A stretch of DNA of 64,000 nucleotides from Adineta vaga (GCA_021613535.1 CP075497.1:868001-932000); one strand, 5' to 3'; shown: positions 30,137-63,249, counted from the stretch's first letter. Notes: generated by a model not told the origin, from the letters alone. Numbers and translations: made by a program.

Positions 30137-30258
30137 AAATCTCTTTTTCTCTATCATTTATGAGGTTTTGTTTATCGATTGATATAAATCATTTTGTTAA
30201 ATTATTAGAAATACAAAGAATACATCTATTGTTAAATTTCTTTGAAAATTTAGTCTAT

Positions 30259-33200
30259 TTAATTCCACACTGCATGAAATTCATATTGACCTGAACCAAC
30301 ATGTACACTCAATAAATTTGTTGTTAAATCTTTTTCAATTTGAAATTCTTGATTATTTGCAATAGTAACACCTGATGACCATATTATTTTGTTACCTTCA
30401 ATCAATGTTTTGCATTGTGCACCAGGAAATAATGGTTCAAACATAATACGAGCTTGTGCATTTGGTGGTATTGTAACACGAAGTAAAATGGAATTAGCAA
30501 TTGTATCACGTTCATCACGAGTATATGAAACATGTACAAGACCATATAATGTACTTAATTGACAATCTAATTTTTTCATCAAATGTTTTTTAGCTTCAGA
30601 AGCCATTCGTGGTCGAATAATGATTGCATCTGATGTAAAATCAATACCAGCTAAATGAGTATAAAACCATGTACCAACAGTAGAATACATATGATGATTA
30701 CGTGAATTCATGCCTGGTCCTGTAAGTGGAGCATTCCATAATTCCCAAATAGTGGTGGCATTTTCATAAGGATTGTTAAACATATAACCGTAAGATGGAT
30801 ATGTTATTGATGTAACTACTTCAAGTGCTAAATCATGATATCCATTATCAGATAAAACAGGATAGATTTGAGCATTAGAGACAATGCCTGTTGTTACATG
30901 ATTTCCTTGTTTGCTAATATCTGTGACGAGATTATCGACAACAACACCACGTACATTAGGTGGTACAACACCAGGTAATGCCAAAGCTAAGACTTGAGCT
31001 GCTTGCATTCCATCAGCATAAGTGTTTGTTGCATTATTAAAAAAGACACGATGAAATTCTTGGGTAAGTTGTTCATAAAATGCTGAATATATGGCAGTAT
31101 CACTCGTTTTTCTCAACACTTGAGACATATTTAATAGAATATTAACATCATGAAGAAAAGCAAATGATGATATAAGAGCTCTATTAGTTTGACCAAATGG
31201 TGGTGGTGGAACCCAATCACCATATTTGCAGAATAAATTAACAAGACCAGTTTGATTATATCCCTTACGAATATATTCTACGTAAGCACGAACATTGTCA
31301 TAATAAGGTTCGAGAAGTGATGAGTCATTCGTATGTCGATAAACTTGCCAAGCTATTGTTGGTAATGCAGTTCCCCAATTTGGATCGGGATTATAACTGG
31401 ATCCAGGTACGAAATCTGGAACTTGTCCATCGGGTAATTGAACATCACAGATTAAATTAAGAAAATTTAGATAAAATTTGACTAAATCAAAATTATATAA
31501 GGCTTCATTGACTGTTAGTGCTGCATCTCCCATCCATCCTCGACGTTCATTACGTTGTGGACTAAAACAATAGAATTCAGAAGAAAAATATTCTATCAAT
31601 CAAACTTACCAATCAGTAGGTAAAGACATTGAGTTACTTAATTGACCCCATTGAACATTATGTTGAATTTGATTAATAATGGGATTGCTCGAAGTGAAAT
31701 TACCTTTTAATGTTGTTTCACTATGTACGAAAGGACATTCAACATCATCGAGAGCCAATGGATTGGGTGAACCATATACAGATATATAACGAAAACCATG
31801 ATAAGTAAAACTAAAGAAAATACCAACTGAAATGAAAACAAATACTAAAGAAATGTCATACGTTGGTTCATAAATTTCAAAAACTGGATCACCATGAAGA
31901 ATGTAAGTGTCCGATGCAACAGCTTCACGAAGATTTTCTGTGTAAATATTTTTAGTAGGTTGACTAAAATTAAATTATGATCATACAAGATCGAAAAATA
32001 AATCATTGATTACTTATTTCCAACAGTTCCTTGAACTAATGATTCTCCGTGACGTATATATGTACCATAACCTGGTGGACCAAGAAATCGTAAACGACAC
32101 CATCCAGCAATATTCTGACCAAGATCAAATGTATGAACACCTGTAAACTATTTATTAGATCTTCTTTCAAACAATAGAAAACATACCCGATTCTGAACTC
32201 CAAGAAGAAACAGGTTGAATTACAACACCAGCAGTTAATGAAGCACCTTTTATTTCGCCTATATCTTCCGTAGTTAAATAATTGTGTTGTTGATTATCAT
32301 TAGTTACTTCAAAATGTAATGCATCCTCTCCCGCTCGAATTGGTGGCATGTCTTGAAGTACAAGTAAACCGGAATCACCGGCCGGTGATGATAATGACTC
32401 AGGAGTAATCCAAGCTGATAAAGAGTCATTGAATCCAGCTTGAGACCAACCAGCACGATTACTTCGACTATCGCAGAATTCTCCATTATAAACACTATCA
32501 TGTTTGATTGATCCTTCACGACCTGTCCATGTCAAATCACTGAGAACTCGCATGTCATCGCCATTTTGAAACGTAACAAACAATGTAAAAACAAGACGAG
32601 GTGGACCTGAAATTCAGAAACAATGTTTGTGCAAGAAAAAAAGGAAAGTTTTATTCACCATTGCCTCCTTGTTCATGGGCATACCAACCATTGCCTAATT
32701 TCACACCCACGGCATTCATACCAGTCTATACAGATAATAATCACTCGTCTTATCGATTAAAAATAAAAATCTCTCACCGTGATATTGGCTGTCACATCAT
32801 ATGAAGCGAGTAAAGTACGTTTCTCATAGGTTGTCCAACCAGGATCAAGTTTACGACTTGGATCAACATTTTTTCCATTCAAATAAAATTCATAATAACC
32901 GACACCAGTCATATAAACAATTGCTGATTTGACAGGACTAGTATTTGGAACATTAAATTCTTTTCGTAATTCATTCATGTTAATTTTTGTTGAGCCAATC
33001 CAAGTAAGATTAGCATTCTGCGTTATATAATTATGTAAATTAAATATAGGTGTTCGAAATTGAATCCATTTAGTCCATTCACTTGCTTCTGCGGAATTTG
33101 TTGTCCATACTCGTATACGAAGCCGATAATATGTTGATGGAAGAAGATCAGCTTGACCTGTGTATTGAACATGAGTTGACTGTGATGAAGCAACACGTTC

Positions 33201-33476
33201 AGAGTTCCATCGATACAAAGTATCTCGATCAGTTAATTTAATTGATTCTAATTGAATTTGATATGCAATTTGTTGAATATTTCGTTGTTGTGAAATATTG
33301 TCAGAAAAAGGAATTTTCCATGAAAATCCAGGTCTTGGTGTATTTATAATTAAATCACGAGTAGTATCAACTTTATGATGATCTATACGAACATCGAATG
33401 GGGCTAATGAACGACCATCAACAACTGACCAAACAAAAATAATAAGAGTGACGCAGTAATGTAGACAGAGCATCAT
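30259..33476 (-). CDS. alpha-L-rhamnosidase, GH78, secreted; six introns (32726-32777, 32607-32658, 32141-32186, 31964-32013, 31811-31861, 31562-31609)
   Basis: LDPGWTTYEKR, FDLGQNIAGW, YHGFRY, PTDCPQRNERRGWMGD, YGDW, ATTIWELW, SRNHHM motifs; 46-52 bp GT-AG introns. Confidence 0.9.
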
Positions 33477-34295
33477 TATACTCTGTAGTAGAGAATAAAA
33501 TATAAGAATGAAATGAGACCTTGCTTTGGTGTCGTACTTTTATATATTCACATCTATCTTATCGGTAACCTCATTGTTTACTCGTCCTTTTTTTAAAGAA
33601 ATAAGCAAAGTGCGCACGAAGTAAAAAGTACAACTAACGTTCTTTAAATATCGTGTCACTAAAAATATAAAAGATATTCAACTATCAGAGTTCTAACTTC
33701 AAATCTCTACGGATGCGATGAGTGAAAATTATTACAAAGACATTGAACTATTTCGCTGTAAATAATAAATAATGGGTATTGTGTAGTAGTTTTCTCTTTT
33801 CACACTTCTTTTGTTCGCATATCTTTGTTTGCTTGAGAAGTGAGAAGGACAAAAAAAAGGCAGGAGAGATTATATGTAATTGATAGTTTTCTCTTTGAGA
33901 AAGAGATAACCAAGGGGGGAAAAGAGGATCCTGGATACCAATAGATCCTGTGGATCCGCAAATATTCTTGAGGATCCTTGTAGGTTCGAGAAAAACTTTA
34001 CAAGTATCATCAACGTCAATAATACTTTACTTTTTAATTTCTTTTCTTTTTTTCGACGACTCATATAACGAAGCCATTTGACTTGATCTATGAACTGTTC
34101 TATAATTATCTTTATTGTATTCGTCTTCATTTAGCAAGGTTCTGTGTAGAATGCAACTGAATCATAATCGATTAAAATACGTTTATAAATTTAAAAGAGA
34201 CCATATAATTGAATTGTAAATTATTGTGATAATAAACATAAGACTCTTACCCTCTTTATCTCGGATCGAGAAGAAAGCAACTTGTATCTACAACG

Positions 34296-36360
34296 ATGAC
34301 AATCGATTTAAATAATTTACCGGATGAAATCATTTTTCTTGCAATGATTAATTTTATGAATTTGTCAAAACTTGTCTAGGTCATGATGAAATGTTATTAC
34401 TTCAAATACAATCTATTAAAAACATTCGAACATTACTTAATGCTCCAGATGTTTTAGCTGTAATTAATATCAAATGTAAAGAACTCACCAATATCAAGAA
34501 TCGTATATGTTTTATTAACGAAAATAACAACAATCAATTTGTTGTAAAAGCAGGAATTAAAGGTGGTATTGATGATTTAATAGCTGCTCTTAAAGAAAAG
34601 AACAAAACGTTTAAAAGCATTAGCGTATTCTTCGAAGAATCATACTTCAACAGCTTCATCTATGTTGAATTCATCAAATCTAAATTCTTCTATTTCAGCA
34701 ATGACACCAACCACAGCTAATTCAACAGCAAACACAAATTCTATTGATTTGACATTAACACTATCAGCAAACATCACAACATTAAATTCAGGTTGAAATG
34801 ATTCAACATTAGTACCAACAACAGATGTAACAACATCAAGTTTAGATTCTACGACCTCATTACTAACACCAACAAATAGTTACTACAGCGTCACAATAGT
34901 TGTCGATCAATGATTATGTAGATTTAATTTCTACTAGTATTGAAAAATTTTCATTGAGTACATTTACAAATCTTGTTTTACGAAACAAACATGATTACAC
35001 GGTATCCTTAGCTGTCTTGGATAAAGATATCGATGGATATATTAAATGTCGATCGAACACAAATACATTTCAATTATCCTCATTTTTCAAACATGTGAAG
35101 AATAGCTGTTGCGTTATGAAGAAAAAGCAACAAACGAAAACGACTTCAAAAGAAATGAACGCTTCATTGAGTAAGTTTTCAGAAAATAATGACTATGATA
35201 ATAATCGAGAAGATGTTGACGATGATGAAAACGCGATAAATTTAACAAATCAAAATGATAGTTATCGAATGGAAACTGACAATTCGGTTTCACAAAAATC
35301 AGATACTGTTCGAAAAAAACGATCTTTGTCAAATTCAACATCATCAAGAATTACAAAAAATCAAAAACATGACAATATGTGAATTATTTTCATTCAATAC
35401 TTATTTATATTATTTATTCTTATGCATTAGTCAATTAGTTATAATTTATAAAATATATGAACTTATTTTTTGTTTGTAAACTTTCATGTTTTGTTTTGGA
35501 TGTAAATTAAACTTAGTTTTATGTTTTTTTCTACTTTGATGTACATTGAATTATTTTGAATAAAATTATGATTAGGTTTTGGATACATTTCTACATCTTG
35601 GATAACCTGCTGTTAGTTTAGTTATTTTGATAAATAACATTTGATTTTTGAAAACGTTTTTCAGCATTTTTCCATTGTGGATAATAATAAAGATTCATTA
35701 TCGTTCTTCAACGTCATTTCATCACTTTCGGATGATGCCTTTTATGATTTTGTTAAAGATACAACAAATCAAAAACGCTCGGATTTTATTGCGAGTACCA
35801 GATGCCTTTTCGTTTTTTAATATTAATAACAAAGAAATAAATAGTTTAAAAGAACGAACTTGTTTTGTTGATGAAAATAAACAACACATTGTAAAGACAG
35901 GAATTCGAACAAATATTCAATTGTTTATTGAATAATTGAAGAAAAATGACGAATTAAAATCAGGTATGATTCATTTGATTTTAGTTCTAATGGTAACATA
36001 TATATATATATATCTGTATTATAGTTCATGAAAAAAATGATCTTATGAACAACTCTAGCAATTTTATTACAGAGAAAAGTGAACCAAATGAATTAAAATC
36101 ATTTTCACAAATATTTATCGATAACTTCTTGAAGAATATGAACAGATCTAGCAGCAATTATAAATTTGACGAGATTGTTAATAAATTTGCTTCAGCATTA
36201 CATATATTATCAGGACATAATGCTTACGAATTTGTTTGCATAAATTTACCTGGTGCTTTGCCTTCGATTACTACATTAAAAAAGTAAAATGAAAACATTA
36301 ATTTACATTTATATGAATGCGATTTTCGATTCGATTGAGTCGATGCTAATTATGTATTTT
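34296..36360 (+). mobile_element. degenerate transposon-associated ORFs plus a P-element/THAP9-like transposase N-terminal fragment
   Basis: Two related fragments (LQIQSIKNIRTLLNAPD at 34391; LKIQQIKNARILLRVPD at ~35750). FASALHILSGHNAYEF..NLPGALPSITTL resembles the P/THAP9 motif. Many stops. Confidence 0.5.
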
Positions 36361-36699
36361 CGGTAAGCATTTGACAAAAAATTCAAGAACGAAGAGATTG
36401 AATTGAATCTTGTGGAAATTCAGGAAATGCAGAGTCTATATATCAGGCGATATGGATTCTTGAAAACGAATACATTATCTGACATTAAAGAGAATTGATC
36501 GAAGGGAGAAGCAAATATATATAAGTATGTAAAACAGCCATGATTTCGATGCACATAGATGTATCGTTAGTAGATTCCTATGAATAATACGTTCTTTCAG
36601 TGTTGATTATTGGGTGCTCAAAAAACTTCTAAAAGATTTGTTGAGTCCATTAACAAGTTGTAGTTTTCATCATAGTTTATCAGAAGTCTTTTTGTGTAC

Positions 36700-36800
36700 T
36701 CAAAAAGTGAGTATACTACTAGAATCGGTCAGTATGTCCGTCCGTTTACACGATAACTCTTCAAAAACATAAGCGAGTGAGCTGAAATTTTGTACACAGC
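36700..36800. mobile_element. DINE-1/HINE-like end fragment truncated at a hairpin
   Basis: GTCCGTCCG microsatellite, ACGATAACTC, CTGAAATTTTG motifs. Confidence 0.4.
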
Positions 36801-36801
36801 A

Positions 36802-36852
36802 TTAGGGTGGGTGTGGGCGTGGGTGTGAGTGATCTTTGTGAAGTTTCACCCA
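36802..36852. repeat. telomeric-repeat hairpin element
   Basis: TTAGGGTGGGTGTGGGCGTGGGTGTGAGTG...TTCACCCA. Confidence 0.75.
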
Positions 36853-39228: not shown

Positions 39229-39416
39229 GAGGAATTGAAAAGACACGACAGCAATGCATTCAAGTGCTTTCTCGATTATTTGTGCAATAATTTCTTAGAA
39301 AAACAAATATAAAAAGCAAACAAGCATTTAGTTGGAAAAACCAAAAACTTAGTGCAACAACTATGACTCTGCCTTCTTTTTCGAATATCTGAATCATTAC
39401 AAAACTTGACGAAAGG

Positions 39417-39535
39417 TCAAGGGTGTGAGTGTGAGTGTGAGCAATGGATGAGAAGAATACCCCACACACACACCCACACCCACCCCCACCCCCACCCCCA
39501 CCCACCCCCACCCCCACCCACACCCACACCCTTAA
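39417..39535. repeat. telomeric-repeat hairpin element with expanded C-rich arm
   Basis: TCAAGGGTGTGAGTGTGAGTGTGAG-CAATGGATGAGAAGAATA-(CCCACA/CCCCCA)n-CCCTTAA. Confidence 0.9.
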
Positions 39536-42500
39536 CTATTGATATTTGTGAATCTTTTTTTCAATATCCATCTATTCCTGTTCTTTATGGACATGTACAT
39601 TTTTTGTATAATAATAATCAATCAAGATTAATGGAAGATATTGGAAATGTTTTATTACCTGATTATATTTGTTATGATAAATATTTATGTAATTCTATTC
39701 AACCGACGTTTTCTTATGAAAATTCTAGTTGTCGATATCGTCAAGAAATAATTAATATTGATCTTGATTATGATAAATTTTTATTATCTGTAGAAAAATA
39801 CTTTCGTCATTGTGCAATTCCATTTATGATGAATCATAATGAACAACATTCATCGATTTATTATTGTAAAAACTCTTCGAAATATATTTCAAAACATCGT
39901 CTTATGGATCATATTATTGATTGTCATTTAGGTGATGATGAAGAACAATTTGAACTTAGTTGTTTATCAAAAGATAAATATCGTTTTAAATGTTATGATC
40001 AAGATAAAATATGTTGGTCATCATCCGTCGATCATAATGTTTGTATTATAAATAATCAAAAACAAAATTTCAATCAAATATCATTTCAAAATATTTGTGA
40101 TGGAATTCTTCATCTTATATCACAAGAAATCAATGGAGAAATTCATAATGATGAAACAGAATGTCAATATTGGCCATGTAATAATATTTATACAAGATGT
40201 GATAATATAAAAACTTGTTTAAATGGTGAAGATGAATATGGATGTTCGGAAAATGATTGTTCATTAAATGAATATTTATGTATTTCACCAATAACATATA
40301 AAAGAATGTGTTTACCATTAAATGAAATGGGTGATAATATAATTGATTGTCTTGGAGGAACAGATGAACTTCAACATTGTTATTTATTACAAGAAGAAGA
40401 AAATAAATTTCAATGTTGGAATAATACACAATGTATTTCTCTTGAAAAATTATGTCATTATTTCTTTGATTGTCGTTTAGAATCTAATTGTCAAATTAAT
40501 GATGAAATATGTTATAAAAATAGAAATAATTATTATCAAATTGAAGATTTAATTTGTCAATTAAATGATATTCAAAATAGAATTAAAAGTTTTTCATTAA
40601 AAACTGCACGAATTTATCCTCAATTAGAAACAAATGTATCTCATAAAAATCTCAATAATAATCATCATCGTGAAATTCATATTAAAAATATTCGATCTGA
40701 TTTTGGTTATGATGGATGGATATGGTATTGTCATCGTGGATTACCTATTATTACATGGTTAGATAATGAAACATTTATACAACAATGTTTATGTCCTCCA
40801 ACTTATTATGGTGATTTATGTGAATATCAGAATGAACGTGTTAGTCTTACATTACGTTTATTATCTATTAATCTAAATAATGTATATACATTTTTAGTAT
40901 TATTAATGGATGATGATGGACAAATTAATTCATATGAACAATTTATATTTACAACACAATGGGATTGTTCAAAAAAATTTAATCTTTATCTTTTATATTC
41001 TACTCGTCCAAAGAATTTATCGAAAATATATTTTATACATATTGATGCTTTTGATAAATATACAATGATATATCATGCTAGTTGGTATTTATCAATTCCA
41101 TTTCTTTTTCTACCTGTCAATCGAATTGCAGCAAATTTATTTATACCATTTCAAAGTATTCAAAATTTACCGACTTGTAATTTAACATGTAATCAAAATG
41201 GTCAATGTATGAAATATATTAATATAGAAAAATTCTTTTGCCGTTGTTATTTGAATTGGACTGGTCTATATTGTGATATACCTGTTGATATTAATGATTG
41301 TTCAAATGATTATTGCGAAAATAATGGTCAATGTATTGTTTTACAAAATAATATAAATGCTTATCGATATGTTTGTATATATTCAGAATTATTTTCTAAT
41401 TTTGATTGTGAAAATAAAAATAAAAAATTAGAAATAATATTAAATAATATAGATATTCCATCATATATATTATTCTATATTATGATACAACATGGTGAAT
41501 CATGGGAAACAATAGTTTTTATCAAAAAATTAATGTATAATCAAAATATGATTCAATTGTATATTGATAGAATAATATCTCTTGCATTTATTAAATTTTC
41601 TAATGATTATTATTTAGCTGTAACACGAACAGAAGAGAATAGTTATGAAGATATTCATACACAAATAACTCCTAATCAACGATGTTTACATATTAATGAA
41701 TTATTTCCAATAACATTATCACGTATTCAACGAATCAAATATTATCATCAAGTTTGTTACAATCGATCAATCGATATCTGGTGTTTTTATGATGAAATTT
41801 ATATGTGTTTATGTACAATAGATAATCATACAAATTGTCTTAATTTTAATCATAATTTAACACTTACATGTCGACATAATGATTTTTGTGAAAATAATGG
41901 TTTATGTTTTCAAGATGATATTACTTGTCCAACAAATACAATATGTATTTGTACAGATTGTTATTTTGGTAATCGATGTCAATTTTATGCAAAAGCTTTT
42001 GGTTTAACACTTGATGATGTTCTTCGTTATGAAATTCAACGTAATTTAACATTTTCTCAACAATCAACAACAATTAAAGCAAGTGCAAGTATTACAATAC
42101 TTATATTTTTTTTAAGTTTTATCAATGGAATTTTTTCTATTTTAACTTTTCGTCAAAAACAATCACAACAAGTTGGTTGTGGATTATATCTATTTAGTTC
42201 ATCAATTACGACGATTCTTACTATGATTTTATTTTTGATTAAATTTTGGTTTGTAGTTTTATTTCAAATTGATTTTGTTGTTAATCGAATAAGTCTTCAA
42301 TTAAGTTGTAAACTTATTGAATATTTATTGAAATCTTCAATATATACAGATAATTGGTTAAGTGGATGTGTGGCAATTGAACGAGCATATTCAGTTTTTA
42401 TTGGAGTTAGTTTTAATAAAATGAAAAGTAAATATATTGCTAAACGAATAATCTGTATTTTAATCATTTTGATTATGTTATCTATTATTCATGAACCTAT

Positions 42501-42969
42501 TTATCGAGACTTATATGATGATAAAGAAGAACAACGAATTTTATGTGTTGCATTTTATTCACAACTAATACAAAATTATAATTCAACAATTATTTTAATT
42601 CATTTTCTTACACCATGTATTATTAATTTATTTTCAGCTTTATTTATAATTATTATGACTGCACGTCAACGTAATACTAGTCAATCTCGATTAACTTTTC
42701 AACAACATTTTATAAAACAACTTAATGAACATAAACAAATTCTGATTAGTCCAACTGCTCTTGTTATTCTATCTTTACCACGTTTAATTATTTCATTAAT
42801 AACAACTTGTATCAAATCATCACGTAATCCATGGTTATATCTTATTGGTTATTTTATTTCATTTGTACCATCAATGCTTATGTTTATTATTTTTGTTTTA
42901 CCTTCTGATTTATATTATAAACAATTTAAAGTCTCAATTAAAATTTGTCGATTATGTTTACAACGATAA
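39448..42969 (+). CDS. 5'-truncated LDLa/EGF-GPCR; open frame begins inside the hairpin
   Basis: Homology to the 6315 paralog starts at ~39536 (GHVHFLY...PDYICY). No signal peptide or N-terminal region. Uninterrupted to the 7TM domain (CVAIER). Confidence 0.8.
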   Translation: MRRIPHTHTHTHPHPHPHPPPPPPTPTPLTIDICESFFQYPSIPVLYGHVHFLYNNNQSRLMEDIGNVLLPDYICYDKYLCNSIQPTFSYENSSCRYRQEIINIDLDYDKFLLSVEKYFRHCAIPFMMNHNEQHSSIYYCKNSSKYISKHRLMDHIIDCHLGDDEEQFELSCLSKDKYRFKCYDQDKICWSSSVDHNVCIINNQKQNFNQISFQNICDGILHLISQEINGEIHNDETECQYWPCNNIYTRCDNIKTCLNGEDEYGCSENDCSLNEYLCISPITYKRMCLPLNEMGDNIIDCLGGTDELQHCYLLQEEENKFQCWNNTQCISLEKLCHYFFDCRLESNCQINDEICYKNRNNYYQIEDLICQLNDIQNRIKSFSLKTARIYPQLETNVSHKNLNNNHHREIHIKNIRSDFGYDGWIWYCHRGLPIITWLDNETFIQQCLCPPTYYGDLCEYQNERVSLTLRLLSINLNNVYTFLVLLMDDDGQINSYEQFIFTTQWDCSKKFNLYLLYSTRPKNLSKIYFIHIDAFDKYTMIYHASWYLSIPFLFLPVNRIAANLFIPFQSIQNLPTCNLTCNQNGQCMKYINIEKFFCRCYLNWTGLYCDIPVDINDCSNDYCENNGQCIVLQNNINAYRYVCIYSELFSNFDCENKNKKLEIILNNIDIPSYILFYIMIQHGESWETIVFIKKLMYNQNMIQLYIDRIISLAFIKFSNDYYLAVTRTEENSYEDIHTQITPNQRCLHINELFPITLSRIQRIKYYHQVCYNRSIDIWCFYDEIYMCLCTIDNHTNCLNFNHNLTLTCRHNDFCENNGLCFQDDITCPTNTICICTDCYFGNRCQFYAKAFGLTLDDVLRYEIQRNLTFSQQSTTIKASASITILIFFLSFINGIFSILTFRQKQSQQVGCGLYLFSSSITTILTMILFLIKFWFVVLFQIDFVVNRISLQLSCKLIEYLLKSSIYTDNWLSGCVAIERAYSVFIGVSFNKMKSKYIAKRIICILIILIMLSIIHEPIYRDLYDDKEEQRILCVAFYSQLIQNYNSTIILIHFLTPCIINLFSALFIIIMTARQRNTSQSRLTFQQHFIKQLNEHKQILISPTALVILSLPRLIISLITTCIKSSRNPWLYLIGYFISFVPSMLMFIIFVLPSDLYYKQFKVSIKICRLCLQR

Positions 42970-53372: not shown

Positions 53373-53431
53373 TAAAGGGTCGGTGTGGGTGTGGACAAGG
53401 CTATACTCCTAAACTACATCCACACCCTCAA
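53373..53431. repeat. telomeric-repeat hairpin element
   Basis: TAAAGGGTCGGTGTGGGTGTGG-ACAAGGCTATACTCCTAAACTA-CATCCACACCCTCAA. Confidence 0.85.
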
Positions 53432-56400
53432 AAACTTCTACAGACATTTTGATTTGATTCTATAGGTTACTTACAGTCGATTTTCTCATTTGTAACTCAT
53501 ATTATTTACACAATTAAATCGATACTTTCTCTCTCTCTCTCTCTCTCCTTTTATTAATCTAATAAAAGATGGCAATTTGCTTCGTAATTTATTGTTTCGA
53601 GTATGTATACTAAATATATTCTGTAATCGTGATACTTGAAAATAAAAAGTTTTAATGATATCTTTTGTGCAACAGGATCTGAAAGAGAGTGTTGAAGTGT
53701 TCAAGGGTAGAAATTTGGACTCAACCTCTCCTCGCCCCCACAGACGTCACCGACTTTATCGAAGTAAACTATTAGAGAAAATGTAGATTTTGTAATTAAA
53801 AAAAAGCAACAGAAATATTGATTATAAATTTTATTTGCAACACAATAGAAAACAGATTTATCGTGTTTCATATTTTTAATCTTGCAATAGGGATTGCACT
53901 AAAAGCTTTTTTAATATTTGTTACCATTAAAATCGTGTCGAATATTATTTATCATCCGGTATGATTTGTTAATATATCAAGGCCATTTTATAATCTCTCA
54001 CATCGTATACCGGATAAAGTGAAATTTTCATTATTTAATAACACTTTTGTTTGATACTATAAAAAAGAAAGATATAGCAACCGTTATCATTTAGCTTTTT
54101 AATACTATGTTCATTGAATTTCAGTAGATTGGTGAATGATGTTACCTATGAGAACGTTATTCTATCTCATATTATTACATTTGGTGATTGGTTCACCTCA
54201 AATCAATCTTGATCTTACTGACTGGGTAAATTATATTCAAAGTGATGCTGTGTTACAACATGATTGTATTTATGTTGCTACTTCGATTAAAAAATGAATT
54301 GATTCTCATCAGATAATTTCGTATTGTATGAGTGAATGGCCAACAGAATGGATGATACGAATAAATAGTCAAGATCGAAATTTTACTTTTGCTCAACTAA
54401 TTCAACAAAATATTACGAGTGAACAATTATATCATTGGTCCGCACCAATGGATGTTATTGAACGTTATCAGTTGTATTTGAATCAATTTCCAACCTCGAA
54501 TGAATTCTTATCGATGGGAACACAATTGTTTTACAATTGTACATCGCCAAGATTTGGTGCATATTGTGTCAATATTCATTGAATGCGAATGAATTCTATA
54601 ATTTATCGTTGAAAGAAATCATTGATAGCTTTTATCTTCAAGAATATATTTAGCAACAACATTAACATGTTACGTACATTTACAATGTTATAAAGTGTCT
54701 TCATCAGCATGTCTTGATTGGAGTAATATATGTGATGAAATTGTTGATTGTCAAAATAGAATTGATGAAAAATCTTGTTAGCCATTAGAAATTAATACAA
54801 AATTTGCCATTTCTTATCGTATTACAAATGCGCCAACATTTGCATTAACGAGAGGTAATTGGAGGAATATGCACATAATACCATTATATGAACATCTTTA
54901 TCAATGCAATACAATAATTTATAATGATGATTCTTTAGATTGTAGCAATTCTAATATGTATCAATGTATTAACTCATCGAAATGTATTTCAAAACATCGT
55001 GTTTGTGATAGTATGAAGAATTGTGATTATGGAGATGATGAAAAATGCGATGGAATTTCCGAATCCTGTTTAGGATATGGATCTAATAAACCATTCAAAT
55101 GTACAATAGCAAATATTTGTATCTCTCAATATTTAGTTGGAAATAGATTGTGTAATTGTCCAATGGATCAATATAATTTATGTGATGATGAATCACCTGA
55201 TAAACATTATATTAGAAAGCATATCTATTTTCCAACTATTTGTGATGGTTTTACAGAACTTATACCTGTTCTTATTGATGGACGAAATGAAACAGATAAA
55301 ACAGAATGTGAATATTGGCAATGTAATAATACTTATACAAGATGTGATGGTATTTGGAATTGTTTTAATGGTGCCGATGAAATTGATTGTAATCCATTTC
55401 CACGATTGAATTCTCCATATCATCATCATCATCATATATGTGTTTCACCTAAGACAAATCAATTTATGTGTTTATCAATTAATAAAGTGAATGATGGTAA
55501 AATTGATTGTCTTGGTGCTTTTGATGAACCGAAATTATGTCGAAAAAATAATTATGGACTGAACGATGAAAAATTTCATTGTTCAAATCATATCAATGAT
55601 TCTTGTGTATCTCTCAGTAAATTATGTATTGAAAGCAAATGTGAAAACAATACTGATAAACAACTTTGTGATTCCAACAGAAATGAGACCGATATCGACT
55701 CGTTTTGTGATCAAAAATATGAATCAATTCGTTCTGATGTTGAAAATTTTCTTTGTAATCATCTCGATGATACTAATAAACCAGAGATTCTACATTTTTC
55801 CTTAAATGAAAAAACTAATTTCTCCAAAACAAAAACACAACAAAGTACTAATATCATAATGACACATTCTTCTATTTTATCAACAACTCGTCAATATCAA
55901 AATCAACGCGTTAGTTTAACTTTGCAATTTCGAGTATTTTCCGATTCTTTACGAACATTATTTTCATTGATTATTTTATTGATTAATGAAAGTAATGAAC
56001 GAATTCGAAAAACGATATTTTCTGTCAATGTAATCAAGGATGTTCAGGACAATATTGTAATATTCAACAAATAATTATTTGTAAATGTTCATGCGATTCA
56101 TTATGTATTGGTATTGCAGCTAACAATCGATCTATATGTATTTGTCCTTTAATAAACAAATGGGGTTCGCATTGCTCCTTTCAAAATACTATATGTCAAA
56201 ATGGAGGTCAATGTATACCTACCGATGAATATATAGAATATTGGAAAACAAATTTATATGTATTTGTTTAAAAGGTTTTAATGGAGAGAGATGTGAAATA
56301 TTTGATACAATAATTACTGTATTATTTGATAAAGATATTGTTTTACCGCAATCAATATTCTTTCATTTTATTCGACAGATCGATCATACTGCACCTGAAA

Positions 56401-57125
56401 ATGGTTCAACATTTAAATCAGTTATTACTAATCAAAGATCAGCAACTATATTAAATGGTCACGCCCCATTTCATGTTATTTTTGTTGAACTACCTGATAA
56501 AACATTTCATTTGATTACAATTCAAACAATTTACAATCAATCAACAACTATTGATCAAATAATTAATTTATTGAATCGTTGTAAACATATAAGAGAATTA
56601 TTTAATGAAACTATTATAAAATATCATCTTCTTCGTCGTATTAAATACGATCATTTACCATGTCAAACATATTCACCACAATTGACTTGTTTTTATGATG
56701 ATATTCATTTTTATTTATGTACAAATTTTGATCGTCAAAGAATAGCTAATTGTTTTGGTAAAAGTATTTGTGCAAAATGAAGGTCAATGTTTACAAGATA
56801 AAGCTATTTGTTCACAAACATCGATATGTGTTTGTCGAACATGTTTTCATGGAGTTCGTTGTCACTTTAGTTCACATTTATTTGGTCTTTCACTTGATGC
56901 TGTATTAGGATATCATATTCAATCATCTACTTTACAAATCAGTGTGATATTAACTATAATTTTAATTCTAGTAGGATTAGTTAATGGTGTACTTTGCATA
57001 TTAACATTTAAGAACAAAGAAGGAAATGAAATGGGTTCGGATTTGTATCTATTAGGTTTATCAATGGGTACTCTAATTACTACAATTCTATTTGCATTAA
57101 AAATTCTGGATACTTTTCATGGCAC

Positions 57126-57177
57126 AAGGGTGTGGGTACTACATCTGTCCAACATCTTCACCCACATTCACCCTCAA
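57126..57177. repeat. telomeric hairpin, left junction of the cargo
   Basis: AAGGGTGTGGGT-ACTACATCTGTCCAACATCTT-CACCCACATTCACCCTCAA. Confidence 0.92.
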
Positions 57178-57926
57178 CTTTTGTATTTAAAAACTTTCCA
57201 TCGCAAGCTTTTGAATAAGTTTGAACAATCATTACAACACGACAATTACCACAAAGTGTGTATTACATCCAAAATCAGTACAAAAAGGACTGTGTTGAGC
57301 TATATAAAGATGTTCCCAACAAAAAGGTTTTTCATCGACACTTGGTTGTGGAGGAAGGAGGAATACAGACCAAACTATATGATACAAATGTGCGGTGCAC
57401 TGAAAAAGGTTTTGAGGGAAGGGACAATAAAACAGTTCCAGATCCGTACCAAACATCTTTTTTCTATCCTTCTTACGTCCTCACCCTCTATTTCAGAAGA
57501 CTGAGGAAAAAAGACAAAATTCTTTCATTATATTTTATAAATAATGATAATTAGAGCTATAATAGTGTTTATCCATATTAATACTTTCACCTGGCTCAAA
57601 TCCAACTTATAACGAGACATACACTGATAGTTTCTTTTTTTGGCTGTATATCTCAATTACAAATCATGTCTTGAGAGTGGATATCTTGGTTTATATCGTG
57701 TATATCTCGCTTATTTACAGCTCATGTACCTACATACTGAGGATTTTCTTCTAGTCCTGATATAATATGTCAAACATTCTTTTTCTACTCTCGACAGAAA
57801 TAATCTTTACTAAAGCTCTATTGATCAAACAGTATAATGTCAGATTTGTCATTCTGATATATATTTTCTAATATTTTCACGTCTGTCAACTTGTCGTAAC
57901 ATATTAATTTCCTATAGTCAAAATCA

Positions 57927-59339
57927 ATGTTGCAGAGAAGAAATTTCCATTACGAAAATGAATATTCATCACTAACTCGTAATCATATTTGTCATTGCAA
58001 TTGTTCGAAATTTTATCATTTAATAGATTTTATCATTAATGCAATTATTCCAATTCTTGTCGGAGGTTCTACAATATTCCTTGTTATTCATCAAAATCGT
58101 CTGATTCAGAATAATTATGAACAAGATCAAGTAATCGCAACAGAACAACATGAGCAAGATCTTTACATTCAACAATCTATACGGAACGAAGATCTTATCA
58201 TACGGCAATTACAACGTCAACAAGATTTAGATCTTGCTCAACTTCGACGAGAACTTGATTTGGCTATAATTGAAAACCAAAGTCGAACAAGTCGAGATCT
58301 GTCTCAGCAGTATTATAACTTATTAGAACTTTATCGAGCTGAAGATTCGAAAATATCTAGAATAAATAGAGTAGAAGATCAAATCCGAGAAAAAGAACGT
58401 CTGCTTGAAATGACATTGATAGAATATCACAATGATCTCCTAGAGATTTTATTGAACTATGGATATTTTCGTGTGACTCAAGATAAAACTATTCTTTTGG
58501 AAATTCAAATGAAAACTCGAAGTATTTTACGAAAACTCGATCCTTCAAGACGAACGATTGTGTTCAAATCCATTATGGCAATAGGTCTCAATGATCATGA
58601 CTTACTAGAGGATAAAATAGACATTTTATCATCGACTGATTTACGTGGTGTTACGTTTAGTGATCTAGTTCTACATGAGTTTTCTATTCCGCAACATCGA
58701 ATAGCACAATTTTATGTTCCACAAAGTGATCTACGAAATGCTTCGTTTCAATTTCTTATTTTTGCAGGTACTTCAGTGGATCTATCTCGAACAAACATGT
58801 ATGGGACCAATTGGAATAATGCAATATTAGCTTTCTTTAGCATTGAAAATGCTTTAATGAATGCTGCTAATTTTCATCATTCATCAGTTACTGCTATGCA
58901 ATTTCGTTTCACTCAACTCAATTATGCTTCATTTAATTTATTGGAAAAATGTCATCAGTTACATTTTGAATCCTTACAAATGAATCATGTCGATCTGAGT
59001 GAAAATAATTTTAATGAATTATGGATTCTCCATGTAACAATGATCGACAGTAGTCTCAATCATACTCGTCATATGAAATCACATTTTGAAGACGTGAATA
59101 TGACGAGAACTGATTTTTCTAATTCAATATTTATTGGTGTAATTTTCAAAAAAGTTATTATGACACAATGTCAAATGGAGAATACGAAATTTATCAGTTG
59201 TATTTTTACCCGTTCAATTTTGGTTGGATGTCTCGGATTCAATCAGGCTAACTGGCATGATACTCAATTGACAAACACTCAATTACCAAACGGAACTCAT
59301 ATTTTACGAACTTGTTTAAATTGTATACAAACATTCTAA
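57927..59339 (+). CDS. TM + coiled-coil + pentapeptide-repeat protein
   Basis: Single N-terminal TM, Q/R/E coiled coil, SDLRNASF and TDFSNSIF pentapeptide repeats; intronless. Confidence 0.85.
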   Translation: MLQRRNFHYENEYSSLTRNHICHCNCSKFYHLIDFIINAIIPILVGGSTIFLVIHQNRLIQNNYEQDQVIATEQHEQDLYIQQSIRNEDLIIRQLQRQQDLDLAQLRRELDLAIIENQSRTSRDLSQQYYNLLELYRAEDSKISRINRVEDQIREKERLLEMTLIEYHNDLLEILLNYGYFRVTQDKTILLEIQMKTRSILRKLDPSRRTIVFKSIMAIGLNDHDLLEDKIDILSSTDLRGVTFSDLVLHEFSIPQHRIAQFYVPQSDLRNASFQFLIFAGTSVDLSRTNMYGTNWNNAILAFFSIENALMNAANFHHSSVTAMQFRFTQLNYASFNLLEKCHQLHFESLQMNHVDLSENNFNELWILHVTMIDSSLNHTRHMKSHFEDVNMTRTDFSNSIFIGVIFKKVIMTQCQMENTKFISCIFTRSILVGCLGFNQANWHDTQLTNTQLPNGTHILRTCLNCIQTF

Positions 59340-59576
59340 AAGAAACTAATACTTTTTCAAATGAATAAAAATAAAATTTTTATAGAAATTCAAACTTATT
59401 CTTGAGCATGAACAAATATTTAATCTTCAGTGAATGTTTTCTTTGAACATGTTTAACGATAAATATTGAGCGAGATAAAATTCTACTGTATCAAACTAAT
59501 ATAATGTTTCAACAACCACAGAAATAGAAAAAAAGTATGTGTTCATGTTAACTAATGATTGACGAAGAGAATAATT

Positions 59577-61046
59577 ATGGCAAACAATGATCTCGACAAC
59601 ACTTCTATTAGAGCAAATCAGACTAATAATGAAAGAAGACAACGACATTTTAACTCAGGACGACATTGTTGTGGTATTGAATGTATTGAATGGTTAAAAT
59701 TAATTTCCAGTGCTGGAATTCCTCTAATGATCGCAGCAATCACTGTGCTGATCACTATTCAGCAACAGAATGTCGCTCAAAAAAATCGCGAGAAAGATTT
59801 GATTAACGCTCAAGAACAACGTAAACAAGATCTCGAAGAAGCTCGAACTCGACGAGCTGAAGATAAGGAAATAGCTCAACAACAACGTGAACAAGACAAG
59901 GATAGTTCACGATTACAGCGTGAACTTGATTTGAAAATTGCTAATGATAAACGTGAATTAGAAGAGAAAATTGCTGAACAGCAACGAATAGTAACTCAGG
60001 AACAACGCCAACATGAATTAGATATAGCTTATAAGACTCGACTCAATGAACTTGCTTTAGAAGATGATCGACAAAAAGAAGCAATTCTTATACAATATCA
60101 ACGTGATTTAGCCGATGTTCTTCTAAATCACTGGGATAATCTTCAAGGCAAACGTGATATGACGAGATTGGCTATTCAGATGAGAACACGTACAGCACTT
60201 CGACTTCTTAATCCCGAACGACGAACTATAGTTGTTCGTTCGCTATATGATGCACATTTGCTTCAGATAAAATTTGAGGAGGATGAATCGGCATTCTTAG
60301 CCTTCGCTAATCTTTCTTCAGTCGATTTTGGACAAAACAAGGATTCATCTGTAGATGATATGTGGTTCTTCTATTCACATTTGATCGTACTTGGAGCTGA
60401 TATGCGTAATGCTTCATTTCGTAATGTCTATTTAGCCAGTTCATTCTTAGGATTCAACGAAGCAAATTTAAATGGTGTTTCTTGGAAACATTTTACTATC
60501 GATAATGTTCGATTTGAACGAGTATCAATGAAACAAGTAATGTTTCAACATGGAAACATATTTAAAGTGGATTTTTTTCGTATTCAGTTGGATTTTACTT
60601 TATTTGAATATACGAAAATAACTGATAACTTCACTGTGACAATGTCATCTATGAAATGGTCAAATATTCGACATTCGAAAATGTGTCGTGCAGAGTTCAC
60701 AAAGACTTCTATAACAGATAGTCATTTCCTTAATACTACTCTTTTATGCGTCACATTTAAAGAAAATAATATGGAAAGAATGAAATTCACTGATCTAATC
60801 CTGGAGCTGGTGATCTTTGAGCGAGTGAATTTGACAAACTGTATCTTTGGGAATATTTCAGTAAACAATGTCATTTTTCGAAATGTAACTATGCGTGGTT
60901 GTCAGGGATTTCATGGTACCGAGTGGAGCTCAACTCATTTTATTTCGACAACTGATCCGCATGGAACACTTATTCAAGATAGCAACTCTGGCAAGTTTTT
61001 TTCAGAACTATTTGCACGCTGCTCAAGCATAAAATGCATTGAATGA
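59577..61046 (+). CDS. TM + coiled-coil + pentapeptide-repeat protein (tandem paralog)
   Basis: WLKLISSAGIPLMIAAIT TM, coiled coil, ANLSSVDF, ADMRNASF and ANLNGVSW repeats. Confidence 0.85.
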   Translation: MANNDLDNTSIRANQTNNERRQRHFNSGRHCCGIECIEWLKLISSAGIPLMIAAITVLITIQQQNVAQKNREKDLINAQEQRKQDLEEARTRRAEDKEIAQQQREQDKDSSRLQRELDLKIANDKRELEEKIAEQQRIVTQEQRQHELDIAYKTRLNELALEDDRQKEAILIQYQRDLADVLLNHWDNLQGKRDMTRLAIQMRTRTALRLLNPERRTIVVRSLYDAHLLQIKFEEDESAFLAFANLSSVDFGQNKDSSVDDMWFFYSHLIVLGADMRNASFRNVYLASSFLGFNEANLNGVSWKHFTIDNVRFERVSMKQVMFQHGNIFKVDFFRIQLDFTLFEYTKITDNFTVTMSSMKWSNIRHSKMCRAEFTKTSITDSHFLNTTLLCVTFKENNMERMKFTDLILELVIFERVNLTNCIFGNISVNNVIFRNVTMRGCQGFHGTEWSSTHFISTTDPHGTLIQDSNSGKFFSELFARCSSIKCIE

Positions 61047-61174
61047 TAGTAGAAGCTGGCACATGACTTTGTAATAGATATCAGTACACTAGTGAGAGTA
61101 TCTGGTCATAAATATTGTATTTCTCTCTTACTCACATCCTTATTTCTCAATCTTTTCGTTCAAGAATGATGAAA

Positions 61175-61216
61175 TGAGGGTGAGTGTATACTACTCATTA
61201 ATACTCACTTGCAACC
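61175..61216. repeat. degenerate telomeric hairpin
   Basis: TGAGGGTGAGTG...ACTCACTTGCAACC. Confidence 0.55.
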
Positions 61217-61868
61217 ATGTCGAAATTTTTTGAAAACTTAAATTCGTATTCGTTTTCTTTAAACATTTTCGAAAGCGAAACTTACTATGCTCTTCGGTTT
61301 CGTCAATGCCTAGAACTCCGTTATTTTAAGCCTTCACCAATCTTGGAAATGACAGAAACTGATTGCTCAATGCTGAGCACTGCGGAATAAGATAAATCGA
61401 TAAGTAAAAACTACAAAGAACCTTCTATTGTATTTGCCATTTTATATGATAATTCTTCATAATTACATCCCGTTGAGCTAAAATTTTGTATACAAAATTG
61501 TTTCATCAAAATCTGAGTTGAGTTCGAAGGTAGAAATGATCCTTTAAGAAATGAATGAGCTATCGAAAATATTCTCATTATTGACCAGATAATATTCTTG
61601 AAGGGAACACAGAAATTTTCCTCAAAACTATTTAAAGTGTATGGAAATGAATTCGGTTCTAGACATTCTTTTCGAGTATGAGATTAGTTCTGAATCAAAC
61701 ATCGGTGTGAGGCTAGAACCAAAGAGCTAGCACGAAAAACGAATATTTAGCGGAAATTTTTTCTGATAATGAATTCTCGTTCGTGAAAACAAGCTTATTC
61801 GATTCAGAATTTAATTCTGCATCGAATGATAGTGCTTCTATTCACGAGAAAACGCTAAGGAAATTTTT

Positions 61869-61930
61869 ATCTGAGGGTGTGGGTGTGGGTACTACATCTA
61901 TCCAACATCTTCACCCACACCCATACCCTT
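61869..61930. repeat. telomeric hairpin, right junction of the cargo
   Basis: ATCTGAGGGTGTGGGTGTGGGT-ACTACATCTATCCAACATCTT-CACCCACACCCATACCCTT. Confidence 0.92.
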
Positions 61931-62602
61931 AATTCAATAATAAATGCATTTCATTGTCTTATTCCATTTATTATTACTGTGATTTCTCAACCAATTATCA
62001 TTACAGTACTTGTTCGACAACAATTACAGATCCATCCTAAACAAAATTATTGAAATCTAATAAGTGAACAATTTCAACAACATCATCATCATCTATTCAT
62101 AACTCCATTTATTCTATTGATTCTTGGTATACCTCGTTTAATCATTTCATTCATTGCAGGTTGTATTAAATCAAATGATAATCTATGGTTATTACTTATC
62201 GGATATTTTGTTTCATTCATTCCATCAATGCTTACTTATATTGTATTTGTTTATCCATCAAAATTATATAAACAAAGATTTCTGAAGAATATCAAGCAAT
62301 ATCAACGAATGATACAAACAATATAACATCTCTAATCTAACAGGTTAGTAAAAAAAAGGAGAAAAATCTCATTATGTAAATGATAATAAAGTGCATAATA
62401 AGGTGATATGTTCTTTTAGATTAGCTTGTTGATGATCGAATCATAAAATGAAGAACAATATTCGATGTTTTTTTGCTTTTTGTCTTGTATAGCGTAGCAA
62501 TGATTATTGCTTTGGTTTTTATATCGCGATCATTAATAAATATCATGTTAATAACAGAATAATAACTTTCTTTCATCATAGGTGAGAAATTAGATATTTA
62601 TT

Positions 62603-62663
62603 TAAGGGTGTGAGGTGTGGTTCGGTTTAGAGTACAGTCTGACCCACATTCTCACCCTCACCC
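62603..62663. repeat. telomeric-repeat hairpin element
   Basis: TAAGGGTGTGAGGTGTGG-TTCGGTTTAGAGTACAGTCTGA-CCCACATTCTCACCCTCACCC. Confidence 0.8.
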
Positions 62664-63249
62664 AGACGTTTGCATAAGGCTCTCCCTACAGTCGAGGGAA
62701 TTTCAATCAATTGTGTCCTTCGCTTATTTTTCATTGTTCAACTCATCAGAAACAAAAAAATTTTGAACAAAAGATATGTACGTAATAAACTTATTCTTAA
62801 TTAGATTTATTGTAGAAGACATTAAAATGCACGAAAATAGAAAGGTTTTATTCAACTTATTTTATCCACAGAAACAAAAATCACTAGTCAAAGTAACTTC
62901 TTTTTTTTCTTTCATAAACTCTTTAAACTATGTGATTTACGTCAAAGAGAAAAAAACATTTTTCTTAACATCAAAATGTTTCTCTAAAGAAAAAATAATA
63001 GTTTTTATAGAATATTTATTGCATCTAGATTTTATTTAATATTCGATTCAATAATCATCTGCAAATATTTGTTTTCGCTGATATTGGTCAATTTAATCAT
63101 TCAATAGTTGTCAATTTCAAATGATAGCAGCCGATGAAAGATCAATTAATATCCAAGAGTATTTAAATGCTAGACATCAACAAATGAATGATAAATCTGT
63201 GAAGAGTCTCGTCGGACGTATTATAATTAAATAAAGATGAAAAGTATTA

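What the first reader, a model, noticed from the sequence alone, without database searches (positions are those of the whole stretch)
57126..61930. 4.7-kb two-gene cargo integrated between duplicated hairpins with hybrid attL/attR-like ends
Seen: 57128-57166 and 61881-61919 match at 38/39 bp, including a 21-bp spacer found nowhere else in the window. They bracket two pentapeptide-repeat genes inside a GPCR pseudogene. The present sites have mismatched outer ends (left AAGGG...CCCTCA; right TGAGGG...CCCTT). Excising the cargo by one crossover gives two self-complementary sites: chromosomal AAGGGT...ACCCTT and circular TGAGGGT...ACCCTCA. Inference: Campbell-type integration of a circle, or insertion of a telomere-capped linear piece into an existing hairpin with the spacer duplicated as a long TSD. 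This is the best in-window evidence that the hairpins are active integration sites.
Basis: partly seen in the sequence, partly recalled or inferred. Interest (0 to 1): 0.93.

Follow-up and report, generated by a model that had tools for sequence, protein, structure and literature searches.

The report
Telomere-capped DNA piece stapled into a gene
In a bdelloid rotifer chromosome, a broken receptor gene was mended by telomerase capping the broken ends and a loose 4.7-kb piece of rotifer DNA, then joining the caps head-to-head with two near-identical short "staples"; this shows how these animals patch DNA into their chromosome ends, but it is not a phage-like integration site.

Summary
57128-57166 and 61881-61919 match 38/39, and short-read contigs from four independent studies support the junctions on both homologues.

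The genome looks like Adineta vaga (six chromosomes, telomere unit TGTGGG). The closest paralogue on C3 carries 329 bp of receptor coding sequence where the window has hairpin-cargo-hairpin. Telomeric G-strand repeats start exactly at both broken host ends.

The cargo is single-copy rotifer DNA capped outward by telomeric repeats. It holds two pentapeptide-repeat genes. Its right end is a palindromic MITE broken at its centre.

Such G-array/spacer/C-array joints are polar and common (763 pattern matches against 5 for the reversed order). They sit where homology to other copies ends.

The spacer is not unique. It belongs to a family of about 75 sites. The two copies here are each other's nearest relatives and share private variants.

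Best reading (about 0.5): a telomerase-capped fragment was captured in a gap, and the second staple is a DNA-level copy of the first or of a pre-existing one, made by homology-primed copying. Campbell-type att recombination of a circle is less likely (0.1).

Many unchecked first-reader notes of this scan describe the same hairpin family elsewhere in this genome.

The parts
53379..53430 (.). Outer hairpin (family F1 core) bounding the receptor-gene block on the left
   Evidence: Census of G-array/spacer/C-array units. Homology to C3 starts at 53429-53431.
53431..57127 (+). Left part of the EGF/LDLa/7TM receptor pseudogene (host left fragment)
   Evidence: Collinear with C3:18060751-18065380 at 87-95% identity. 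The paralogue's ORF shows EGF and LDLa domains plus a weak 7tm_1 match.
57128..57137 (+). G-strand telomeric repeats added to the broken host left end
   Evidence: The paralogue continues with coding sequence after ...GCACAA; the window continues GGGTGTGGGT.
57138..57158 (+). Staple core (21-nt spacer, family F3), left copy
57159..57176 (+). C-strand telomeric cap of the cargo's left end
   Evidence: It ends ...CACCCTCA, the usual outer boundary of a cap. A second allele carries one extra CACACC after 57168.
57177..61871 (+). Cargo: single-copy rotifer genomic fragment
   Evidence: The own-genome DNA search finds only itself at full length. It sits at diploid depth in four studies.
57927..59339 (+). 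Cargo gene 1: coiled-coil-like Q/E/R-rich region plus pentapeptide-repeat domain (470 aa)
   Evidence: ORF. Pfam Pentapeptide_4 / Pentapeptide.
59559..61046 (+). Cargo gene 2: paralogue of gene 1 (495 aa)
   Evidence: (D1). Best database relatives are 32-40% identical, one from Adineta ricciae.
61701..61874 (+). One complete arm of a palindromic MITE, cut at the palindrome centre
   Evidence: Many genomic copies lie as inverted pairs. The alignment to both arms of C3:17658263-17658645 runs to ...ATCTG and then gives way to telomeric repeats.
61872..61890 (+). G-strand telomeric cap of the cargo's right end
61891..61911 (+). Staple core (21-nt spacer, family F3), right copy
   Evidence: 20/21 identical to the left copy, in the same orientation.
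61912..61928 (+). C-strand image of telomeric repeats added to the broken host right end
   Evidence: Homology to the paralogue resumes at 61929 (TTAATTC...).
61929..62604 (+). Right part of the receptor pseudogene (host right fragment)
   Evidence: 93% identical to C3:18065710-18066401.
62605..62667 (.). Outer hairpin (F1-like core) bounding the block on the right
   Evidence: The G-array starts at the same base in the C3 copy, but the rest of the hairpin differs.

Best explanation
A receptor gene in a bdelloid subtelomere suffered a double-strand gap that lost 329 bp. Telomerase added short G-strand repeats to both broken 3' ends. A loose 4.7-kb piece of the rotifer's own DNA had been capped by telomerase in the same way at both ends; its right end came from a break at the centre of a palindromic MITE. 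The caps were then joined head-to-head. Each joint is a 'staple' made of G-array, a short templated core, and C-array. The two staples that flank the cargo are DNA-level copies of one staple. A G-tailed end annealed to the G-arm of an existing staple, copied across the core into the C-arm, and the new C-rich 3' end annealed to the G-tail of the partner end. The template staple was either already present in the gene as the scar of the 329-bp gap, or was the first joint of the same event. Formally this equals ends-in, gap-repair integration of a linear fragment whose ends are homologous to the two arms of a hairpin. It therefore gives a Campbell-like product without a circle and without a recombinase. 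Shown: the break, the telomeric additions, the outward caps, the core family, and the shared private variants. Inferred: the copying step, the order of events, and the enzyme.
For: Break and healing: the closest paralogue has 329 bp where the window has hairpin-cargo-hairpin, and the repeats begin at the last shared base on both sides. Cargo caps face outward, and the right end lies at a MITE palindrome centre. Polarity across the genome: 763 G-then-C matches against 5 C-then-G. Joints mark the ends of homology blocks. Cores are templated and not random filler: family F3 has about 75 sites and F1 about 45, and both arms join the core in a fixed register while the flanks are unrelated. The two copies here are mutual nearest neighbours at 38/39, with the next best at 34-35/39. 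No other genomic site lies within one mismatch of the 21-mer. Copying from nearby DNA happens elsewhere. An F1 sub-variant occurs only as five copies within 137 kb on C1, all with unrelated flanks. Another private F1 variant forms an adjacent inverted pair at C3:18060307-18060456. The junctions are real and lie on both homologues. Background: neotelomeres and telomeric scars at breakpoints in A. vaga (PMC13564844); telomerase-made insertions at breaks, rarely head-to-head around a telomerase-RNA fragment, in vertebrates (PMC8537989).
Against: No intermediate allele (a single hairpin without cargo) was seen. Only one lay of assembled contigs was possible, and contigs drop rare variants. The homology available for priming is short, 10 nt and 8 nt. 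Close same-core pairs are rare, only one among about 75 F3 sites, so this is not the usual way the mosaic grows. Consensus-like F3 copies on different chromosomes are also 36-38/39 identical, so high identity alone proves little. The argument rests on the few private variants. The source of the core families (RNA or DNA) is unknown. The cargo's donor locus was not found.
Confidence: 0.5

Rival explanations
1. One capture event with two independent joints. Each of the two joints was built separately from the same external template, either an RNA such as a telomerase-RNA segment or a telomere-targeting retroelement tail, or a distant DNA staple. The shared direct orientation is then a 50:50 outcome.
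For: Cores form families with many identical consensus copies on different chromosomes, as a master template would give. Vertebrate TERC-ITS loci show that telomerase RNA can be retrotranscribed at breaks, sometimes between head-to-head repeats. Arms start as a nested set (ATCT)(TG)AGGG, as expected from copying an RNA template from variable entry points.
Against: The variant shared by the two copies occurs nowhere else in the genome. Adjacent joints in the mosaic usually carry different families. No retroelement or RNA gene carrying a core was found. The one 'long' F3 subfamily turned out to be a foldback MITE with the hairpin at its centre. An RT fragment next to a hairpin was simply another fragment between hairpins. 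Regional clustering of sub-variants argues for local DNA templates.
Confidence: 0.2
2. Campbell-type integration. The capped cargo first closed into a circle through its own staple. One reciprocal crossover with an identical staple already in the receptor gene then inserted it.
For: Direct repeats with hybrid outer arms are exactly the expected product.
Against: It needs two independently formed staples with the same private variants. The cargo holds no integrase or recombinase. No circle junction or empty-site contig appears in four studies; the only skipping contig is the paralogue. It needs more steps than ends-in copying, which yields the same product.
Confidence: 0.1
3. A composite or pack-type DNA transposon whose ends are hairpin elements, moved by a transposase acting on the telomere-like inverted arms.
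For: Complete hairpins have symmetric ends (ATCTTGAGGG...CCCTCAAGAT) and occur hundreds of times. Foldback MITEs are abundant here.
Against: There is no target-site duplication, and 329 bp of target are lost. The two hairpins are direct repeats, not inverted. The cargo is single-copy. Arm lengths and start points vary as nested sets and begin exactly at break points.
Confidence: 0.05
4. Two unrelated F3 staples that became alike later through gene conversion, or that match by chance.
For: The family is moderately abundant, three F3 members lie within 12 kb here, and gene conversion is frequent in this animal (PMC8494291).
Against: The sub-variant makes up roughly 1% or less of hairpins. The conversion tract would be only about 40 bp between repeats 4.7 kb apart. 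No other F3 pair lies within 10 kb among the sites listed.
Confidence: 0.07

Closest known systems
Interstitial telomeric sequences inserted by telomerase at double-strand breaks, including TERC-ITS loci with head-to-head repeats (vertebrates; PMC8537989)
   Same: Telomeric repeats begin at a break and are accompanied by a deletion. Rare loci (two in mouse lemur, one in Xenopus) have two head-to-head stretches around a short templated fragment, explained by telomerase acting on both sides of the break.
   Different: Here the architecture is common (hundreds of sites), the central cores form several families of unknown source, the joints link unrelated fragments as well as the two sides of one break, and one joint has been duplicated around a captured 4.7-kb piece.
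Chromosome healing and neotelomere formation in Adineta vaga (PMC13564844) and short internal telomeric stretches in bdelloid subtelomeres (PMC2861651, PMC8494291)
   Same: Same organism group, the same TGTGGG repeat, and repeats found at deletion breakpoints and scattered through subtelomeres.
   Different: The passages of those papers that I read report no inverted G/core/C unit, no core families, and no capped fragments captured internally. I could not read Gladyshev and Arkhipova 2007 or the Terminon paper.
Athena / Terminon endonuclease-deficient Penelope-like retroelements at bdelloid telomeres
   Same: They attach to exposed G-rich 3' ends and are followed by telomeric repeat addition (PMC3846280).
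   Different: By the published model all repeats then face one way. Here the arrays face each other, the cargo has no reverse transcriptase, and no element body carrying a core was found.
Ends-in (gapped linear plasmid) homologous integration, the double-strand-break repair model of Orr-Weaver and Szostak (from my own knowledge)
   Same: A linear DNA whose two ends match adjacent target sequences integrates, the gap is filled from the target, and the target homology ends up as a direct repeat on both sides.
   Different: The homology here is only 8-10+ nt of telomeric repeat, so it would be microhomology-primed synthesis and not classical Rad51 recombination.
Phage-type Campbell integration at att sites
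   Same: Direct repeats of a core with hybrid arms flank the inserted DNA.
   Different: There is no recombinase, no circle, the target lost sequence, and the 'att' is a repair scar family.

Membership tests
Telomerase-mediated break-repair scar (ITS / head-to-head TERC-ITS type) | Telomeric repeats start exactly where homology to an uninterrupted copy ends | tested here: met
   Paralogue C3:18065381-18065709 (329 bp) is replaced. Repeats start after ...GCACAA and, on the bottom strand, after ...GAATTAA.
Telomerase-mediated break-repair scar (ITS / head-to-head TERC-ITS type) | The G-rich strand runs 5' to 3' away from each broken end, so arrays face each other | tested here: met
   All four ends here do so. 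Genome-wide there are 763 G-then-C matches against 5 C-then-G.
Telomerase-mediated break-repair scar (ITS / head-to-head TERC-ITS type) | The central fragment is retrotranscribed from telomerase RNA | not testable with these tools
   I do not know of a described rotifer telomerase RNA. Rfam gives only a tRNA in the window.
Campbell-type site-specific integration | A recombinase is encoded by the element or known for the site | tested here: not met
   The only Pfam hits in the two cargo ORFs are pentapeptide families plus a weak SV2 luminal-domain match.
Campbell-type site-specific integration | Circular form or empty site detectable | tested here: inconclusive
   No such contig appears in four runs, and the skipping contig is the paralogue. 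Contigs drop rare forms.
Campbell-type site-specific integration | Direct repeat of a common core with hybrid arms | tested here: met
   38/39 repeat with arms as described.
TIR / foldback / pack-type DNA transposon | Target-site duplication and clean insertion | tested here: not met
   329 bp of target are missing and there is no duplication of host bases.
TIR / foldback / pack-type DNA transposon | Several copies of the whole element | tested here: not met
   The cargo is unique in the genome.
Athena-like telomere-attached retroelement | Reverse-transcriptase ORF, or a body shared among copies upstream of the 3' tail | tested here: not met
   Flanks of 46 F3 copies are unrelated. The one shared flank is a foldback MITE arm.
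Ends-in gap-repair integration of a linear fragment | Fragment ends are homologous to the two sides of the target, and the target homology is duplicated around the insert | tested here: met
   The cargo caps match the hairpin arms. The G-arm, core and first 8 nt of the C-arm are present on both sides in the same register.
Ends-in gap-repair integration of a linear fragment | Pre-existing target (a single hairpin) before insertion | not testable with these tools
   This needs other isolates or species, and the one run search and one read lay were already used.

The most novel reading that the evidence does not exclude
Bdelloid rotifers build their subtelomeres, foreign genes included, by a dedicated capture pathway. 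Telomerase caps any free DNA end, starting from a fixed point of its template (giving ATCTTGAGGG then TGTGGG repeats). Capped ends are then joined head-to-head through a short templated 'staple' that is copied from nearby staples. Staples therefore multiply as families and serve as re-usable landing pads for further capped fragments. The cargo here would be the first caught example of a landing.
Probability: 0.3. Interest if true: 0.85.

Novelty: new variant of a known kind. Interest (0 to 1): 0.62.

Why it matters
How bdelloid rotifers take up and keep so much foreign and rearranged DNA near their chromosome ends is an open question. This locus gives a base-level picture of one capture. Both sides of a break and both ends of the captured piece carry telomerase-made caps, and the joints are members of a polar family with conserved cores. 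The same architecture bounds neighbouring fragments, one of which holds a bacterial-type rhamnosidase. If that generalises, it yields a testable pathway of cap, staple and re-use, a sequence signature for dating and counting capture events, and a prediction for the unknown rotifer telomerase RNA template. If it does not, the locus is still a clear example of telomerase-assisted break repair with fragment capture.

Tried and rejected
(1) Empty site or circle. The lay of contigs from four studies gave one 'skip 57127 to 61929' contig. It carries the C3 paralogue's SNPs (61987-61989 and others), so it is the paralogue and not an empty allele.

(2) Donor locus of the cargo. The own-genome DNA search finds only the cargo itself, plus MITE and repeat pieces and a 70% paralogue on C5. 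The protein search with gene 2 gave only 32-40% relatives, so no orthologous context could be fetched.

(3) Retroelement origin of the core. The F3 subfamily with a shared 190-bp left flank is a foldback MITE arm with the hairpin at its centre. An RVT_1 hit 250 bp from an F3 hairpin is a broken fragment lying between two hairpins. There is no hammerhead or other Rfam hit.

(4) True chromosome ends. The first and last 2.5 kb of C6 and C3 hold no terminal arrays, so the start of a genuine telomere could not be compared.

(5) Is ATCTTGA added or host sequence? The flank of the hairpin at 11306 has no paralogue, so this is untested.

(6) Cruciform cutting as the source of the duplication. This is unlikely: the inferred single hairpin would have a 10-bp stem and a loop of about 22 nt, and the left hairpin folds no better than shuffles (-6.8 kcal/mol, z -1.2).

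The census rests on about 150 kb of local sequence plus pattern counts.

(8) The note that a Rab-like gene is cut at hairpin 18033 could not be confirmed from ORFs alone.
Full report
**Organism and setting.** The window is G000:C6:868001-932000 of a 100.8-Mb genome in six contigs. It is AT-rich and is peppered with the hexamer TGTGGG (61 near-matches to GGGTGTGGGT against 0.4 expected). TGTGGG is the bdelloid telomeric repeat, and a six-chromosome assembly of about this size is that of Adineta vaga (PMC8494291; PMC7943196). The species name is my inference. The window lies 0.9 Mb from a chromosome end, in a subtelomere.

**The observation.** The repeat 57128-57166 / 61881-61919 is 38/39 identical. 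Its 21-nt spacer occurs only twice in the window. Between the repeats lie two paralogous ORFs of 470 and 495 aa with C-terminal pentapeptide repeats.

Contigs of public runs from four studies cover the cargo at one even depth. They bridge the right junction in all four runs; the one listed contig bridging the left junction is from X7. They also show allelic bubbles: an extra CACACC after 57168 with two linked SNPs, and 12 differences in 60898-61072. Where listed, the two depths of a bubble add up to roughly the local total depth. The structure is therefore real and present on both homologues. One run differs at 23 of 3,729 cargo positions and still has the junctions, so the event is not recent.

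**What happened to the host gene.**
- The closest copy of the flanks is on C3 (87-95% identical). That is too similar for the ancient genome duplication, so I call it a paralogue.
- It is collinear with window 53429-57127 and 61929-62620.
- Where the window has hairpin-cargo-hairpin, the paralogue has 329 bp of receptor coding sequence.
- On the left, the shared sequence ends ...GCACAA and the window goes on GGGTGTGGGT.
- On the right, read on the bottom strand, the shared sequence ends ...GAATTAA and goes on GGGTATGGGTGTGGGTG.
- Both broken 3' ends thus carry G-strand telomeric repeats from the break onward. That is the signature of chromosome healing by telomerase.
- The paralogue's ORF has EGF and LDLa domains. 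Its C-terminal part gives a weak 7tm_1 match below the curated cut-off. 'GPCR-like receptor pseudogene' is therefore a fair description.

**What the cargo is.**
- It is unique in the genome at full length.
- Its last 170 bp are one complete arm of a palindromic MITE family that normally occurs as inverted pairs. The arm runs to the palindrome centre (...TTTTTATCTG) and then gives way to AGGGTGTGGG....
- Its left end is preceded by ...CACCCTCA.
- The cargo is therefore a piece of rotifer DNA with outward-facing telomeric caps on both ends. At least one end came from a break at a palindrome centre.
- The nearest database relatives of its genes are 32-40% identical; the only named one is from Adineta ricciae and the rest are unnamed or metagenomic. 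Nothing marks the cargo as foreign.

**The hairpins in general.**
- A stringent pattern for G-array, 6-36 nt, C-array matches 763 times in the genome, mostly in distal regions of the chromosomes. The reversed order matches 5 times.
- In 144 kb of local sequence there are 39 such units and 3 reversed ones.
- They sit where homology blocks end. The receptor block itself is bounded by hairpins at 53379-53430 and 62605-62667.
- Outer boundaries form nested sets, (ATCT)(TG)AGGG on the G side and its mirror CCCT(CA)(AGAT) on the C side. The full ten bases appear in roughly a quarter of cases.
- I read this as telomerase copying its template from variable entry points on non-telomeric ends. That is inference.

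**The spacers are not random filler.**
- The spacer here belongs to family F3 (core A[C/T]TACATCTRTCYRACA). It gives 122 pattern matches at roughly 75 sites.
- A second family, F1 (core TAAGAGTATAGYCTGA), has about 45 sites.
- In both families the core joins both arms in a fixed repeat register, while the flanks beyond the arms are unrelated.

**Where the template comes from.**
- I found no support for a retroelement tail. The only F3 subfamily with a shared long flank is a foldback MITE with the hairpin at its centre. An RT fragment beside one hairpin is simply another fragment between hairpins.
- A telomerase-RNA origin, as in vertebrate TERC-ITS loci (PMC8537989), cannot be tested, because I know of no described rotifer telomerase RNA.
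- There is evidence for local DNA templating. The F1 sub-variant ...GTCTGACT... occurs only as five copies within 137 kb on C1, all with unrelated flanks. Another private F1 variant forms an adjacent inverted pair at C3:18060307-18060456.

**The pair around the cargo.**
- Among 46 aligned F3 copies the two are mutual nearest neighbours (38/39; next best 34-35/39). They share deviations from the family consensus (TCCAACA and TCTT before the C-arm).
- No other site in the genome lies within one mismatch of the 21-mer.
- Identity alone is weak evidence, because consensus-like copies on different chromosomes are also 36-38/39 alike. The private variants carry the argument.
- Among the listed F3 sites no other pair lies within 10 kb.
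- On both sides the caps meet the core in the same register as the host arms. A blunt, staggered-cut duplication would give this only about once in 36. That points to a homology-guided process.

**Mechanism.**
- The simplest account is that a G-tailed end primed on the G-arm of an existing staple, copied the core and the start of the C-arm, and then annealed through that C-rich end to the partner's G-tail.
- If the staple already sat in the gene as the scar of the 329-bp gap, the capped cargo behaved like a gapped linear plasmid in ends-in integration. The product looks like Campbell integration without needing a circle or a recombinase.
- If both joints formed in one event, the second was copied from the first. 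I cannot tell these two orders apart.
- A true circle-by-crossover event needs two independently made staples with the same private variants. I rate it lower.
- A transposon reading fails on the absence of a target duplication, the direct orientation of the ends, and the single copy of the cargo.

**Known or new.** Telomerase-made insertions at breaks are known, as are neotelomeres in A. vaga and short telomeric stretches in bdelloid subtelomeres. In the papers I could search and read I found no description of three things: the inverted unit with conserved core families, its role as the joint between capped fragments, or a duplicated joint around a captured piece. Two key older papers were not available. 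I class the finding as a new variant of a known kind.

**Limits.**
- Only one read lay, on assembled contigs, was possible. Contigs cannot show rare forms.

Noticed in passing
window 29970-36804 (genes at 30262-31599 and 32760-33476, minus strand): A bacterial-type alpha-L-rhamnosidase (Pfam Bac_rhamnosid6H at E 7e-73, plus its N-terminal domains) lies in a fragment bounded by hairpin 29924-29969 and the G-array 36805-36831. It is a horizontal-transfer candidate sitting in the same 'capped fragment' frame.
   Followed up: partly
window 11805-13811 (minus strand): An intact-looking glycoside hydrolase family 59 (galactocerebrosidase-like) ORF lies between hairpin 11306-11360 and the G-array at 14758.
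   Followed up: no
many hairpins, e.g. window 3860-3883, 11300-11320, 14752-14775; L050, L075: Cap boundaries share an extended consensus, ATCTTGAGGG followed by TGTGGG repeats, mirrored on the C side. 'Unit-length' hairpins show exactly one such pass on each arm. This predicts a telomerase RNA template of about 17 nt reading 3'-UAGAACUCCCACACCCA-5'.
   Followed up: partly
G000:C1:16152242-16289277: Five F1 hairpins carrying the private sub-variant ...GTCTGACT... lie within 137 kb and nowhere else in the genome, all with unrelated flanks. Staple cores seem to spread locally.
   Followed up: partly
L039 (C3:18060307-18060456): Two F1 hairpins with the same private core variant sit back to back in inverted orientation, only a few bases apart. 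The paralogous C6 block has a single copy (window 53379-53430).
   Followed up: partly
window 62590-62667 versus C3:18066385-18066440: The G-array at the right edge of the receptor block starts at the same base in both paralogous copies, but the core and C-arm differ. The same cap therefore has different partners in the two copies.
   Followed up: partly
C3:19852695-19853116; C4:14212192-14212606; C4:13163306-13163694: A second foldback MITE family (arm starting GAGTAGCTGCC) carries an F3 hairpin at its palindrome centre in several copies, as if a centre break had been stapled and the repaired element then spread.
   Followed up: partly
window 61701-61874 and e.g. C3:17658263-17658645: A palindromic MITE family of about 385 bp with 170-bp arms and dozens of copies. 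Window 61441-61589 belongs to another dispersed repeat family.
   Followed up: partly
window 57168 and 60898-61072: Heterozygous differences appear in all four studies: an extra CACACC in the cargo's left cap with two linked SNPs, and a 175-bp stretch with 12 differences inside the cargo. The dense stretch could be a conversion tract from a paralogue.
   Followed up: no
window 39420-39532: A hairpin with an unusually long C-arm made largely of CCCCCA / CCCACC variants. A 1,187-aa ORF with no Pfam match (39406-42969) starts within it.
   Followed up: no
window 21304-21376: One tRNA gene, the only Rfam match in the window.
   Followed up: no
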